Source: Oculina patagonica (taxonomy: Eukaryota). Taken from it: a DNA stretch of 64,000 nucleotides. Every line of letters starts with the position of its first letter. The first letter of the stretch is position 1. Shown here in pieces: positions 36,699-41,141 of this stretch. Below the pieces are notes generated by a model. It ran no database searches and was not told the DNA's origin. It was given only the letters and a program-made list of their open reading frames with translations. A program made the translations under genes and the position numbers. Where the stretch lies: NCBI RefSeq assembly GCF_052425735.1, contig NC_135770.1, forward strand, positions 21,824,001-21,888,000, in the 5' to 3' direction.

Positions 36699-39600
36699 AT
36701 GGCGTCGCATTCTATGGGAAAGACCACGTGCATTAGCTGGGAAGATTTCCTTGCTCTTCATCGACCACAGCTCCTGTCTATCGGCTTACCGGAACATTTA
36801 TGGGAAAGACTTTACAAGAAGCTATCGCCTATCGCAAGTTACGACGCCACGGAGGCATTTGAGTTGCACAAAGACGAACAATTTGTGTCCCCGGGTCGCT
36901 GGTCTCTCCACGCCAAACGGAATTTGCAAAAATTTAGCGACGTGTTTCTTATCGAGCACGCTTGGTCAAGCGATGGCGGACCGACTGCTAAGAAAAATTT
37001 GGAAAAATCGCCAGAACTATTGGCGAGATTGAAGGAAATGATGACTCGCCCAGCAGAAAACTCGGCCAGTAATGAGAGAAGCGACGAAGCCCCGCTAGAC
37101 AGCTCCCAGGTTCTTGCGCAAATCAGTGGAGTCAACGAAAAGAAAGCCAAAGAAACCCTTCAATCCACTGACAGTGATCTAATTGAAGCTTTGTGTCAAA
37201 TCACGGGCGATTCTAATGAAACTAAAAAGCCGTCGAAATCCGACAGGTCAAAAATTATGACCTTCGAGGAATTCAAAACTGGCTTTCTTCACGCCGTCGG
37301 TATGGAGAAAGCAAAATTGCTCTCCGAGGAATACGTTCACAAAATGTATTGCAGATACAAAAGGGAAAAGGAGCAATACCCAGAATCGATGGGCTTTGGT
37401 TATGGAACAACATCGACCTACAGTTGGTCAGAGGAAGACGAAGGCGCGATGGCAGTGTTTGTGTCTGTTCCTGTAACGACAAAAAAGCGCGACGTTGTGA
37501 GCAAATTGTCGACGAAGCGCTGGACTTTGGGCATAAAAGGCTGCGCTCCTATTATCGATGGGGAATTTTACGGCAATGTTTGTCCCGATGGATCGTTTTG
37601 GACATTTGATTCTCCCGGTTTGTTGGTCATGACGCTTCAGAAACCGGAGAATGAGGAATCCGAATTATGGCCGGTAAGTTTGTAGTTTTGATCTAGATAA
37701 ATAATACATTTTTCGCTCGCTCCAAGCGTGACAATGGGCTTAACGTCTTTAGAAATTTTTCAGGATCGGCGTCAAATTGCGCTACCAACAGGTATTTATT
37801 AACTAATTACACAGGGCTCCCGTGTAACTTTGATCGAGCACTCTTTGCCTATTACAGCCAATATTCGCGCTAAGAGAAAATTTAATGTTTTTCTTTCGAG
37901 TGGATCTGCCATCAAAAGTCAAGTGGAAAAACTTTTTCCTTAATCGTTCCAATATTTGCATTTTCAACTTGTTACATTATGTACATGCACCTTAAACCAA
38001 TCCCTAAATGTTTTCATCATTATTGGCATTTTACAATTATTTTTTTTTATGACAGTACAGTCAGATGAATTCAAACAATTTTTTCCCTTTAGATAAGAAA
38101 TATCATATGGCAAGTTTGGATTACTGAGAAGTAATTGCCATTGAATAGTTTAATATTTCCACTCCTGTAAACATATCAATGCAAACATATCAAACGACAG
38201 CTAAATAAATATTTTAATCATTTACAAAGGAACAGATTTTTTTATGTGACATCGAAACCGCACCTGTGGCTTGTAATAAGTAATTGGTATATGCAGATGT
38301 AAGTGTTATGATTAAACTTATCTTTCCACAAAACACAGAAGACCCCTGCTGAAAATTACAAAATTGGCGTCACAGGAAAGATAGTGAAGTATGTGACTAC
38401 CTGCTGGGGTTGATTGATCATGTTACAGCATAGAATTTGACAAGTTGCCAGCCTAGCTAGCTACATTCCATCTGTTCAGAACTCCGTTGAAAACATTTGC
38501 GAATAAATTTGAGTGTGAAGTGAGAGTATCTGAATAATTGTTTGAGACTTAGACATCCAAATTCAAATCATATCAGGCAAACAAATGAAAGTCAAGAAGC
38601 AACAAATAAATTTCTAACCTTAGAATTGATCTTAAGTTAAGCCGACTGCGGCATACGGTAGCTAACAGGTTGCAATATAACCAAAAAATATTTTCATTGT
38701 AATGGCAGGGTTAATTTGTATTGATATACCAGTATCAAATATATACATTAACAATATTGAACACTCTGTTCGCGAGTACTGTTATGATTTCATATTACAT
38801 GTATATTTGATGTAATATCTATGAAATCCAATGCTTTATAGTTTTATGCTTTCCAAGAGATCTACCTTACTATAGGAATATAACGAAGCATTTTAACAAT
38901 GCGAACAAAATCTATGTTGTTAAATCAATGTAAATTTTGAATGGAATGGTTGTGCTTACATGTATTCAATTAACGCAAATTTAGTGCTTTATGTGTAATA
39001 ATTTCCATAGCAACATGTACTTTTTATATGATAAAACAGCAACGTCTAACAAAGGAACTCGAGGTTTAATACCTGTAAATGGGAAGACAGGAAGGCCTTA
39101 CATTAATGAGTCTAAAGACATTTTAAAATCAAAATTGAATGCCGATGTGTCAACTAACTCTAGCAGAGAGATAGAGGACATGTAACTTTGTTGGAAATAG
39201 ATATAACGATGCTGTAAATTAGTGTGATTTTAATTAACAATGACACAAATTAAGGCGCATAAAATTAACATAAATTTTAATGAATTTTTAAAATTCATGT
39301 TTAATAACTTGCATTGTAAATTTCTTATAGTGAGGTACTTCAACTGTTTGTATTTCCATTTCAGGTTTTAATCAAAGGAGAAAAGCATTTGACAGAAAAA
39401 GAAATTTCCAATCAAGCAAGAGACAAGAGTCATGAAACTGACTACAAAATGTACCAGGTGTTGGAGAGTATGTGGTATTATAACCAGACGTATCAAGCAG
39501 TGACACAAGAAGGTGATAAGCGTAAACCTGTTTGGTATGTAATGGACGAGTTAGGATCTGCCATTGTGCATAGTACTCAACCCAATGTCAAGTGTTCGCC

Positions 39601-41141
39601 TTTCGCTTTTGCTGGAACTGGAGTGTTTTACTCCCTTCTTTGGCCTGTGACAGATTTGAAGCCAGGCGACATGTGTTCTAGAAACTTTTGTCCTCCGCTG
39701 AGCATGGCAGAAACAGAACTGCAAAGAGAGGCACGGCTTTTAGCCTGCAACTCTTTACTTCCTGAAAGTTGTCCAAGAAACTTTGTTGTTGAACTTGCCA
39801 AGTTTCCCACTGTGGAGAAGGAAAACAATGTAGTGATCAATGTCAATTCTCTAGAAGCAAAGAAGGAAAAAGTGAACTGCGTTCACTCGAAAGGCAAAAA
39901 GTTGAACTTGAAGTTCTTTGTTGAACAGAATGGAAGAGAGAAGAGACCAGTTTTGAGAGATTTAGGTTGCACACTTGTTGGGTCGTCAACAGAAGCTGAA
40001 GCTGTATGGCTAGAGAGGTGGATCAGGCCAGGGCAGAGTATCCAGGGTGATGCAAGAGTCAACCGTCTCGGAGGGGAAGAACACCTACTACATCGGCAAT
40101 TGCTTTCTACCCATGTTCAACGAGTTTGGGGTAACGTGCCTTGGTTCCCAATTTCTTACGACCTGTCAAAACACTTGGCAGCTCTGTGTGCTGAGCATTA
40201 CTTCTGCGGAATTTCCAGTTACTGGATTTTAAGAGCAGCAGATCCCAGCACTCTCAGCATACAACCCATTGTGACCAGTGATCTACCAAGAGTGATCAGG
40301 TGCACAGAGATTGGTCACCTGGTGGCGTCGCATTGTAAGTAGAATGTACTCATACTGTAATTCTATAATTCACCTGCAACACAACCTCGAACATTTTGTT
40401 GTCATCTATGCCTCGTTAAGCACCAAGGTCAGTGCCCCATTCGTCCTTGTGCAGAAGACAATTCTACATTCTAGCTCCTGTGCATGAGTCATATTAGTGT
40501 CCCCGATTAGTAAGCCCTACTGAACGACCCATGCCGCCTGTAACCCATTTTGATTTTTTGTTTCAGACTGCTTTCAGACCGCTGTATGCAAGAAGAGGCG
40601 TTTCTGTCTCCAGTATGCAGTGACAGTTAAATCCCTGGTGCCATTACAGCTTCTGATACACAACACTCCACATGTGACCCTGGCAGAGAGCGAGACCAAC
40701 CCGAAAGATTTCCTGGACGAGTATGATTCCTCAGCTCTTGTGTGTGTTGGCTCGTCGGACATAAAGAAGAATGGAATGGTAAATCACAAGGTGACGCACG
40801 AAGAGTTTTTGAAAGACCTCAACACCAATTACTTGACAAGGATGCAAACGACATGGGGTGCTGTTCAGTCAAAGATTCACAAGACTATTGCTAAACTGTT
40901 TTATGCTGTAGCGCCAAGTCTTTCTTCTTTTCAAGAAGGAAATCGGACGGACCTCTGTGCGGTGTACGGTGTCGATATACTATTGAAGGACAGCTTAGAG
41001 CCTCTTATCATTGGAGTCGATCCTACACTGAGGTTCGACACTCAGAAGTGTTTTTCAGATGTTGTGGTCACAGCATTTGGACAAAACGGTGAGTGTTTGG
41101 AAAGTGTGAACATCAGCCAGGTTTCTGTGAGAGAACAGTGA
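36699..41141 (+). CDS. TTLL12-like protein with inserted UBA-like and CS domains and a degenerate TTL domain, ~839 aa
   Basis: Exons 36699-37673, 39365-40334, 40567-41141. TTLL12 signatures FLALHRPQLLSIGLPEHLWERLYKKL, VFLIEHAWS, VLESMWYYNQTY, PVWYVMDELGSAIVHS, YSLLWPVTDLKPGD and AVYGVDILL. Confidence 0.85.

What the first reader, a model, noticed from the sequence alone, without database searches (positions are those of the whole stretch)
36699..41141. TTLL12-like protein with UBA-like and CS (NudC/p23-type) domains inserted in its SET-like region
Seen: between TTLL12 blocks SPELLARLKEMM and VLESMWYYNQTY, which lie close together in ordinary TTLL12, there are ~230 extra residues. These include VLAQISGVNEKKAKETLQSTDSDLIEAL (resembling the NAC-alpha/HYPK UBA helix bundle) and YSWSEED..VFVSVPVTTKKRDV..WTLGIKGCAPIIDGEFYGNVCPDGSFWTF..LLVMTLQK..LWPVLIKGE (NudC-family CS domain pattern). 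Inference: a TTLL12 paralog combining a SET-like fold, a ubiquitin/nascent-chain binding module and an Hsp90 co-chaperone module, i.e. a possible tubulin quality-control adaptor. I do not know this architecture from model organisms.
Basis: partly seen in the sequence, partly recalled or inferred. Interest (0 to 1): 0.75.

Follow-up and report, generated by a model that had tools for sequence, protein, structure and literature searches.

The report
TTLL12 paralog with nested UBA and CS
This is a real, expressed gene for a second TTLL12-like protein with two extra modules (a NAC/HYPK-type UBA and a NudC-type CS chaperone domain) inside its SET-like domain; the form is conserved in cnidarians and some fungi, I found no paper on it, and it hints that the poorly understood TTLL12 family works with chaperones.

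Summary
Three exons (36699-37673, 39365-40334, 40567-41141, + strand) give a clean 839-aa reading frame. Single transcript contigs from three runs join all three exons at GT..AG borders.

- **Domains.** Pfam finds a CS domain (36 bits) inside a split SET_TTL domain. A profile of 36 homologous inserts matches the NAC-alpha UBA (E 1.5e-10). AlphaFold gives a three-helix bundle, a helical linker and a NudC-like beta-sandwich.
- **Paralog status.** The genome also has a canonical, many-exon TTLL12 on another contig, with no insert.
- **Not unique.** Nematostella, Actinostola, Hydractinia and the fungi Coemansia and Mycoemilia share the layout. Other fungi have only the UBA at this site, and an alga (Closterium) has LRRs there.
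- **Lost motifs.** CS-bearing forms have lost TTLL12's conserved nucleotide-binding motifs, so the protein is most likely a non-catalytic scaffold.
- **Function.** A role linking tubulin dimers to Hsp90-type chaperones is plausible but untested.
- **Literature.** No paper I could search describes this architecture.

Verdict: a new variant of a known kind, of moderate interest.

The parts
36699..37673 (+). Exon 1 (aa 1-325): N-terminal half of the SET-like domain, UBA, helical linker and CS domain
   Evidence: Open frame and gtaagt donor at 37674. Transcript contigs end this exon at 37672/37673.
36699..37100 (+). SET-like domain, N-terminal half (aa 1-134)
   Evidence: PF25556 profile positions 27-80 at aa 80-134 (16.6 bits, below cut-off on its own). 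Aligns with the N-termini of TTLL12 proteins.
37101..37202 (+). NAC-alpha/HYPK-type UBA three-helix bundle (aa 135-168)
   Evidence: AF2 helices 135-143, 147-156 and 161-168, block-mean pLDDT 80-94. The family profile A2 hits NACA UBA at E 1.5e-10, and 19 of 36 members hit PF19026.
37263..37376 (+). Helical linker with the conserved FEEFK motif (aa 189-226)
   Evidence: AF2 helices 189-200, 202-207 and 210-226. FEEFK appears in the consensus of alignments A1 and A3.
37401..37643 (+). NudC-type CS beta-sandwich (aa 235-315)
   Evidence: PF04969 36.4 bits. PDB NudC 2cr0 at E 7e-6. Foldseek 3qor at E 4.9e-7, rmsd 1.8 A. Block-mean pLDDT 86-98 over aa 241-310.
37674..39364 (+). Intron 1 (1691 nt)
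   Evidence: Skipped with GT..AG ends in contigs of X1, X2 and X7.
39365..40334 (+). Exon 2 (aa 326-648 plus the first base of codon 649): C-terminal half of the SET-like domain, the middle region and the start of the TTL-like domain
39449..39691 (+). SET-like domain, C-terminal half (aa 354-434)
   Evidence: PF25556 profile positions 75-155, 82.8 bits, E 3.4e-23.
40335..40566 (+). Intron 2 (232 nt, phase 1)
   Evidence: Skipped with GT..AG ends in contigs of X1, X2, X3 and X7.
40567..41141 (+). Exon 3 (aa 649-839 and the stop codon): C-terminal part of the degenerate TTL-like domain
   Evidence: PF03133 TTL 26.4 bits (cut-off 20.1) on exon 3 residues 10-150. Motif losses are shown.
40067..41138 (+). 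TTL-like ATP-grasp-type domain (about aa 560-839, interrupted by intron 2). The TTLL12 motifs are replaced: WILR 612-615, HYC 648-650, FCLQY 661-665, GVD 798-800.
   Evidence: Alignment with canonical TTLL12 proteins. The ortholog model's C-terminal half matches TTLL6 and TTL crystal structures.

Best explanation
What it is (shown): an expressed three-exon gene for an 839-aa member of an old, divergent branch of the TTLL12 family. Judging from its nearest relatives, the genome is probably an anthozoan cnidarian's. A cassette of NAC-alpha/HYPK-type UBA, helical linker and NudC-type CS domain is nested in the insert-tolerant loop of the SET-like domain (the iSET position). The two SET halves lie on either side of the cassette, as the MYND finger splits the SET domain in SMYD proteins.

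The TTL-like half keeps the fold, shown on the ortholog model. It has lost the residues that canonical TTLL12 conserves for ATP/Mg binding.

How it most likely works (inferred): it is a non-catalytic scaffold. By analogy with human TTLL12, which binds the free alpha/beta-tubulin heterodimer and needs its TTL domain to do so, the SET/TTL body would hold a client, most likely the tubulin dimer. The CS domain would recruit Hsp90-type chaperone machinery or act as a holdase, as NudC, p23 and Sgt1 CS domains do. The UBA would dock a further partner, as the NAC-alpha and HYPK UBA domains do.

My odds: the anatomy, paralogy and expression about 0.9; a non-catalytic scaffold about 0.6; a specific role linking tubulin to chaperones about 0.3.
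For: - Gene model and splicing.
- CS domain. UBA.
- TTLL12 fold: the full-length ortholog model (pLDDT 79.6, pTM 0.72) has TTLL12 as its top structural match over its whole length. Its C-terminal half matches TTLL6 and TTL crystal structures.
- Separate canonical TTLL12 in the same genome.
- Separate branch: in a tree built without the insert columns, all UBA-bearing proteins fall on one side of a starred branch (96), and the canonical animal copies, including this genome's, form another clade (98).
- Motif loss: WICKPWN, KYI, FDIRY, FTVMNY and LEVN are replaced in all CS-bearing forms sampled but kept in most UBA-only forms. The motifs are as defined in PMC3520985.
- Constraint: CS is the best conserved region against Nematostella (56%) and Actinostola (58%). 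The transcript variants listed by the tool are 26 synonymous to 11 non-synonymous.
- Human TTLL12 binds the tubulin heterodimer and needs its TTL domain for that: PMC10883266.
Against: - No binding partner was tested here.
- The degenerate TTL-like domain may no longer bind tubulin. The surface that TTLL12 uses for tubulin is not mapped, so I could not check whether it is kept.
- CS domains have many roles besides Hsp90 binding, for example the NudC/LIS1/dynein pathway.
- NAC-type UBA partners are diverse.
- The ortholog model is not the window's own protein.
- The runs used for splicing evidence are only guessed to be RNA.
Confidence: 0.5

Rival explanations
1. Same anatomy, but the client is not tubulin. 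The protein uses the TTLL12-type body as a generic scaffold in a NudC-like (LIS1/dynein) pathway or a ribosome-associated pathway (NAC, NatA/HYPK, SRP), and the lost TTL motifs reflect loss of any tubulin link.
For: The CS domain is closest to NudC and NudCD3. The UBA profile matches ribosome-bound NAC-alpha best. The TTL motifs are heavily degraded: Pfam TTL scores only 26 bits, against 128-228 bits in the full-length insert-free, UBA-only and LRR-insert TTLL12 proteins scanned.
Against: The TTL-like fold and the whole TTLL12 body are kept over long divergence. No non-tubulin client of the TTLL12 fold was found in the papers read here.
Confidence: 0.25
2. It is still an enzyme, for example a SAM-dependent methyltransferase acting through the SET-like domain, and the UBA-CS cassette is a regulatory or targeting insert.
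For: PMC10883266 reports SAH production when human TTLL12 is incubated with tubulin, which suggests possible methyltransferase activity. The SET-like C-terminal half is well conserved (82.8 bits).
Against: PMC3520985 found no histone methyltransferase or tyrosine ligase activity in human TTLL12 and notes that critical SET and TTL residues are missing. The ATP/Mg motifs are lost here. I did not examine SAM-binding residues.
Confidence: 0.12
3. It is a decaying or neutrally drifting duplicate with no function of its own.
For: The TTL-like domain is degenerate and the branches are long.
Against: The 839-aa frame is intact. Spliced transcripts occur in several runs and studies. Synonymous changes are in excess, 26 to 11. 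Orthologs keep the same layout across anthozoans and hydrozoans, and fungal proteins share it. The CS domain is the best conserved part.
Confidence: 0.04
4. It is a gene-model artefact: exon 1 (with UBA and CS) and exons 2-3 (the TTLL12 part) belong to two neighbouring genes.
For: A 1.7-kb intron separates them, and exon 1 alone is called as a separate protein in several databases (P0001-P0003).
Against: Single contigs bridge both introns in three runs. The SET_TTL profile continues across the junction. Full-length proteins with the same order exist in Nematostella and Hydractinia, and as uninterrupted 761-782-aa proteins of the P0010 group.
Confidence: 0.02

Closest known systems
Canonical TTLL12 (human Q14166; this genome's copy at G000:C2:26382506-26401332, minus strand)
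   Same: N-terminal SET-like domain plus C-terminal TTL-like domain, with the same overall fold (TM by hit 0.71 for the ortholog model). Human TTLL12 showed no tyrosine-ligase or histone-methyltransferase activity in vitro (PMC3520985).
   Different: This protein has about 220 extra residues (UBA, linker, CS) at the iSET position. The WICK, KYI, DIRY and EVN motifs are lost. It has 3 exons against at least 13. It sits on a separate branch of the family tree.
Uncharacterised 'CS domain-containing' TTLL12-like proteins: Nematostella A7SHP9, Actinostola QZH41_018659, Hydractinia XP_057315834, Coemansia and Mycoemilia proteins
   Same: Same domain order. Identity is 46-47% to the sea-anemone proteins, about 33% to Hydractinia, and 32% over the aligned N-terminal stretch to the two fungi. 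The loss of TTL motifs is shared.
   Different: They come from other species. None was named in any paper I could search. A CS-only tree places the fungal and animal embedded CS domains in separate groups, so one shared gain of CS is not shown.
UBA-only TTLL12 of Mucoromycota and Zoopagomycota fungi and Lapot gusevi (P0034, P0037, P0042, P0097, P0100, P0041)
   Same: A NAC/HYPK-type UBA at the same site in the SET-like domain. They fall on the same side of the starred branch in the tree.
   Different: They have no CS domain. Most keep the TTL motifs and score high in Pfam TTL (129-208 bits); Halteromyces (46 bits) is an exception.
NudC-family CS domains (NudC, NudCD2, NudCD3)
   Same: Closest sequence and fold match for aa 235-315.
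   Different: Here the CS domain is nested inside another domain. No Nudc_N or NudC C-terminal region was detected.
NAC-alpha / HYPK UBA domain (PF19026)
   Same: Three-helix bundle; the family profile matches the NACA UBA at E 1.5e-10.
   Different: It is internal rather than C-terminal, and the window's own copy is diverged below the Pfam threshold.
Split SET domains with nested modules (SMYD proteins with MYND; iSET inserts of SETD3, SETD6 and LSMT)
   Same: A foreign module sits in the insert region of a SET fold. PMC3520985 describes an iSET-like insert at human TTLL12 aa 158-188 and larger inserts in plant and protist orthologs.
   Different: The nested modules here are UBA and CS. The comparison with SMYD rests on my own knowledge and was not tested here.

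Membership tests
TTLL12 family (SET_TTL PF25556 + TTL PF03133) | SET_TTL domain above the Pfam gathering score | tested here: met
   C-terminal half 82.8 bits against a cut-off of 25.6. The N-terminal half scores 16.6 bits on its own, and the domain is split by the insert.
TTLL12 family (SET_TTL PF25556 + TTL PF03133) | TTL domain above the Pfam gathering score | tested here: met
   26.4 bits against a cut-off of 20.1 on exon 3. This is far below the 128-228 bits of the full-length insert-free, UBA-only and LRR-insert TTLL12 proteins scanned.
TTLL12 family (SET_TTL PF25556 + TTL PF03133) | Overall two-lobed TTLL12 fold | tested here: met
   Tested on the 46%-identical Nematostella ortholog, not on the window's own protein. 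Human, mouse and worm TTLL12 are the top hits, with TM by hit 0.68-0.71 over residues 1-810.
TTLL12 family (SET_TTL PF25556 + TTL PF03133) | TTLL12-conserved ATP/Mg motifs (WICK, SKYI, DIRY, EVN; PMC3520985) | tested here: not met
   They read WILR, SHYC, CLQY and GVD in the window's protein. All CS-bearing relatives sampled show similar loss.
TTLL12 family (SET_TTL PF25556 + TTL PF03133) | Orthology to canonical animal TTLL12 | tested here: not met
   The canonical copy is on contig C2 and groups with the sponge, insect and nematode proteins (98). The window's protein groups with the UBA-bearing proteins (96). An all-animal clade is not formally rejected (AU p = 0.06).
CS domain (PF04969), NudC type | Profile score above the gathering cut-off | tested here: met
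   36.4 bits against 21.3, E 1.1e-8.
CS domain (PF04969), NudC type | Seven-stranded beta-sandwich fold | tested here: met
   AF2 strands over aa 235-314 at block-mean pLDDT 86-98 for aa 241-310. Foldseek matches NudC 3qor at E 4.9e-7, rmsd 1.8 A.
CS domain (PF04969), NudC type | Binding to Hsp90 or a client | not testable with these tools
   No eukaryotic Hsp90 reference was available for the complex tool. This needs a pull-down.
NAC-alpha/HYPK UBA (PF19026) | Profile score above the gathering cut-off on the window's own sequence | tested here: not met
   Only UBA_4 at 17.2 bits (cut-off 21.8), E 0.0045; no PF19026 hit.
NAC-alpha/HYPK UBA (PF19026) | Homology of the module, as a family, to NAC/HYPK UBA | tested here: met
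   Profile A2 (36 homologous inserts, the window's first) hits human NACA UBA at E 1.5e-10 and archaeal NAC 1tr8 at E 2.3e-10. 19 of 36 members hit PF19026, best E 5e-13. Mycoemilia P0031 scores 43 bits against a cut-off of 27.
NAC-alpha/HYPK UBA (PF19026) | Compact three-helix bundle | tested here: met
   Helices 135-143, 147-156 and 161-168, block-mean pLDDT 80-94.
SET domains with a nested module at the iSET site | The insert lies at the iSET position of the SET-like fold | tested here: met
   The break falls at PF25556 profile position 75-80. UBA-only and LRR inserts occupy the same site in other lineages. PMC3520985 places the iSET insert at human TTLL12 aa 158-188.

The most novel reading that the evidence does not exclude
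The UBA-CS cassette is a 'Rosetta stone' fusion that reveals what the TTLL12 family does. On this reading, TTLL12-type proteins are non-enzymatic chaperone adaptors for newly made or free tubulin heterodimers. They work with NAC-type nascent-chain machinery and Hsp90. The UBA-bearing form is ancestral to opisthokont TTLL12, survives in cnidarians (perhaps also ctenophores) and early-diverging fungi, and was lost in bilaterians.
Probability: 0.2. Interest if true: 0.75.

Novelty: new variant of a known kind. Interest (0 to 1): 0.5.

Why it matters
A paper held here (PMC10889654) calls TTLL12 the most mysterious member of the TTL/TTLL family. It is conserved across eukaryotes, binds free tubulin dimers, affects cilia, mitosis and antiviral signalling, and has no agreed activity.

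This natural, conserved variant has a chaperone-type CS domain and a NAC-type UBA built into the same chain, and its nucleotide-binding motifs are gone. That gives a concrete, testable lead: the family's core job may be scaffolding or chaperoning rather than catalysis.

It also shows that the iSET loop of the TTLL12 SET-like domain is a hot spot for domain insertion. Different lineages carry a UBA, a UBA plus CS, or LRRs there. Finally, cnidarians carry two old TTLL12 lineages, while the bilaterians sampled here show only the insert-free form. Nematostella and Hydractinia, which are laboratory model cnidarians by my own knowledge, could be used to test the function.

Tried and rejected
- **Word-index protein search.** It found almost nothing beyond close relatives. 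With the Nematostella ortholog and with an 8-row alignment it returned 3 and 4 hits. So I could not make a taxon-labelled census of the architecture. The third search found a group of 761-782-aa proteins with the same Pfam pair. Only one carries a name, an EukProt header 'sb/3462344/'. I recall that header style from a ctenophore gene set, but could not check it.
- **ESM Atlas.** Searches by features and by structure gave no SET_TTL+CS cluster. Only clusters of 50 or more members are searched, so this says little.
- **The look-up of encoding contigs.** For two exon-1-like hits it gave only metagenome or SRA contigs without taxa.
- **UBA/CS in the canonical gene.** I looked in the 4-kb intron at the matching position of the canonical C2 gene and in the rest of the genome. 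Nothing turned up. One small canonical exon (the MW.YNQTY block) was not located.
- **AU test.** The grouping 'all animal TTLL12-like proteins form one clade' gave p = 0.06, so an animal-specific duplication is not formally rejected.
- **CS-only tree.** With 86 columns it could not settle whether animals and fungi gained CS once or twice.
- **Rfam.** No hits in 35000-43000.
- **The window's own full-length protein.** It could not be given to the fold or search tools as one reference because of the introns. I used exon-wise references and the Nematostella ortholog instead.
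Full report
**1. The observation**

The stretch 36699-41141 holds three open segments on the + strand. Joined at canonical splice sites, they give one frame of 839 codons and a terminal stop. Exon 1 ends ...TGGCCG|gtaagt at 37673. Exon 2 starts ...ttcag|GTTTTA at 39365 and ends ...GCATT|gtaagt at 40334. Exon 3 starts ...tttcag|ACTGCT at 40567. The ATG at 36699 is the first in-frame ATG after an in-frame TGA at 36630.

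Public run contigs laid on 36500-41400 show both introns skipped with GT..AG ends inside single contigs. These are X1 record 2 (2875 nt), X2 record 8 (2148 nt) and X7 record 20 (7021 nt). X3 shows the second joint. The runs come from different studies and organism labels. They are only guessed to be RNA, but an intron-less joined form is what mRNA gives.

**2. The domains**

- **SET-like and TTL-like.** Pfam places SET_TTL (PF25556) profile positions 27-80 at aa 80-134, and positions 75-155 at aa 354-434 (82.8 bits). About 220 residues therefore sit inside that domain. TTL (PF03133) is found in exon 3 at only 26.4 bits.
- **CS.** Inside the insert, PF04969 scores 36.4 bits (cut-off 21.3, E 1.1e-8) at aa 240-315. 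By sequence the best solved relatives are NudC CS domains (2cr0, E 7e-6).
- **UBA as a family.** The same module is present at the same place in more than 60 related proteins. A profile of 36 of them hits the C-terminal UBA of human NAC-alpha (E 1.5e-10) and archaeal NAC 1tr8 (E 2.3e-10). Nineteen of the 36 hit PF19026 UBA_HYPK. In Mycoemilia P0031 the hit is above Pfam's cut-off (43 bits).
- **Model.** An AlphaFold model of exon 1 with 29 aligned sequences (mean pLDDT 80.6) shows three parts. Three short helices lie at 135-168, a helical linker at 189-226 and a beta-sandwich at 235-314. Foldseek matches the sandwich to NudC (3qor, E 4.9e-7, rmsd 1.8 A), then NudCD3, Sgt1, p23 and small heat-shock proteins.

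**3. A paralog, not the organism's TTLL12**

The genome (529 Mb) has a second SET_TTL locus at G000:C2. tblastn with canonical TTLL12 proteins lays out at least 13 exons over about 19 kb on the minus strand, 26382506-26401332. They carry the classic motifs HWICKPWNLARALD, KYIENPVLF, FDIRYLVL, FTVMNY and LEVNYCPDCE. No UBA or CS coding piece lies in that gene or anywhere else in the genome.

**4. The architecture elsewhere**

An exhaustive profile-free search with exon 1 found full-length proteins that match across the whole of it. Pfam shows SET_TTL + CS (± UBA_HYPK, ± TTL) in them. Their sources are listed below.

| Protein | Source |
|---|---|
| P0004 (815 aa, 46% identity) | Nematostella vectensis A7SHP9 / XP_001628836, 'CS domain-containing protein' |
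| P0164 | Actinostola sp. |
| P0013 (782 aa) | Hydractinia symbiolongicarpus XP_057315834, filed as TTLL12 |
| P0029 | Coemansia spiralis (fungus) |
| P0031 | Mycoemilia scoparia (fungus) |

- **CS in another fungus.** Paraphysoderma (P0064) has CS at the same site.
- **UBA only.** Halteromyces, Syncephalastrum, Entomortierella, Jimgerdemannia and Thamnocephalis, and the protist Lapot gusevi, have the UBA alone at this site.
- **LRRs.** Closterium and a JGI protein have leucine-rich repeats there.
- **No insert.** The sponge, insect, nematode, oomycete and amoebozoan proteins sampled have almost no insert.
- **Unlabelled group.** Proteins of 761-782 aa with the same Pfam pair were found with P0010. 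Their taxon is not given. One header style suggests a ctenophore, which I recall from memory only.

PMC3520985 had already noted an iSET-like insert at human TTLL12 aa 158-188 and 'a large insert' in plant and protist orthologs. It does not describe UBA or CS.

Full-text searches found no relevant paper. TTLL12 with 'CS domain' returned nothing. TTLL12 with HYPK, UBA or NudC returned only papers that list the terms separately, with no link between them. The accession numbers returned nothing.

**5. Family history**

I built a maximum-likelihood tree of 37 full-length proteins on 565 columns, dropping the insert columns. All UBA-bearing proteins fall on one side of a starred branch (96). The window's protein sits in a starred six-row group (98) with the sea-anemone, hydrozoan and P0010 proteins. 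The genome's canonical copy sits in a starred clade (98) of nine rows. Its named members are sponge, insect and nematode proteins plus one oomycete, Saprolegnia.

Forcing all animal rows into one clade costs 21 log-likelihood units, with AU p = 0.06, so this is not formally rejected. A tree of CS domains alone gives a starred clade for the animal-type embedded CS and a separate group for the fungal ones. Whether CS was gained once or twice is unresolved.

The shared UBA at one site argues that the UBA-bearing lineage predates the animal-fungal split. Either the ancestor had it and the canonical animal form lost it, or two old paralogs were sorted differently.

**6. The TTL-like half is degenerate**

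Aligned with canonical proteins, the window's protein reads as follows.

| Canonical motif | Window's protein |
|---|---|
| WICKPWN | WILRAAD |
| KYI | HYC |
| FDIRY | FCLQY |
| FTVMNY | no counterpart |
| LEVN | IGVD |

All CS-bearing relatives sampled show similar losses. Most UBA-only proteins keep the motifs. These are the ATP/Mg motifs that PMC3520985 lists as conserved in human TTLL12.

The fold is kept. The full-length model of the Nematostella ortholog (pLDDT 79.6, pTM 0.72) has human, mouse and worm TTLL12 as top matches end to end (TM by hit 0.68-0.71). Its C-terminal half matches TTLL6 and TTL crystal structures.

**7. Constraint**

Against the sea-anemone orthologs the CS domain is the best conserved region (56-58%), followed by the SET halves (49-53%). 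The transcript variants that the tool listed are 26 synonymous to 11 non-synonymous. The list is partial, so this is indicative only.

**8. Mechanism**

Shown: the anatomy, the splicing, the conservation and the motif loss.

Inferred: a non-catalytic scaffold. Human TTLL12 binds the free tubulin heterodimer and needs its TTL domain to do so (PMC10883266). NudC-family and related CS domains work with Hsp90 or as holdases (my own knowledge; the structural neighbours include Sgt1-Hsp90 and p23-Hsp90 complexes). NAC and HYPK UBA domains are docking modules on ribosome-associated complexes (my own knowledge; the PDB hits are ribosome-NAC entries).

The most economical reading is an adaptor that brings a TTLL12-type client, probably the tubulin dimer, to chaperone machinery. 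I put this at about 0.3. The broader 'non-catalytic scaffold' I put at about 0.6. The main rival keeps the anatomy but drops tubulin as the client.

**9. Verdict**

The gene is a member of an old, conserved branch of the TTLL12 family that I found described in no paper, and it is not a one-off. Its relatives are already in public databases under uninformative names.

I class it as a new variant of a known kind, with moderate interest. The value lies in the functional hint it gives for an enigmatic family and in the clear experiments it suggests in Nematostella or Hydractinia.

Noticed in passing
window 38862-38914 (inside intron 1): A stretch of about 50 nt is covered at very high summed depth (hundreds to thousands) by many short contigs on both strands in all four runs, each continuing into unrelated sequence. 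It looks like a piece of a dispersed repeat carried in many transcripts. Rfam finds nothing there.
   Followed up: partly
P0020 (1494 aa; not in the window): A protein with seven CS domains followed by a classical SET domain (PF00856), so CS and SET are also combined in an unrelated architecture.
   Followed up: no
P0101 (Closterium, 955 aa) and P0088 (JGI, 765 aa): TTLL12 proteins with leucine-rich repeats inserted at the same iSET position, where cnidarians and fungi carry UBA or UBA plus CS. The site is a hot spot for domain insertion.
   Followed up: partly
window 36500-41317, run X7 contig 20: Divergence from the window is very uneven: 4 differences in 1173 nt over exon 1, but 42 in 971 nt over exon 2 and 23 over exon 3. 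This could be a haplotype or introgression boundary, or a chimeric assembly of two alleles or species.
   Followed up: no
G000:C4:9377351-9418763: At least six Tubulin_C matches within about 42 kb, on both strands: a tandem cluster of tubulin genes.
   Followed up: no
window 48840-50909 and 25084-25602: Earlier first-stage notes on this window flag a torsin-like gene and an odd histone H3 variant. I did not examine them.
   Followed up: no
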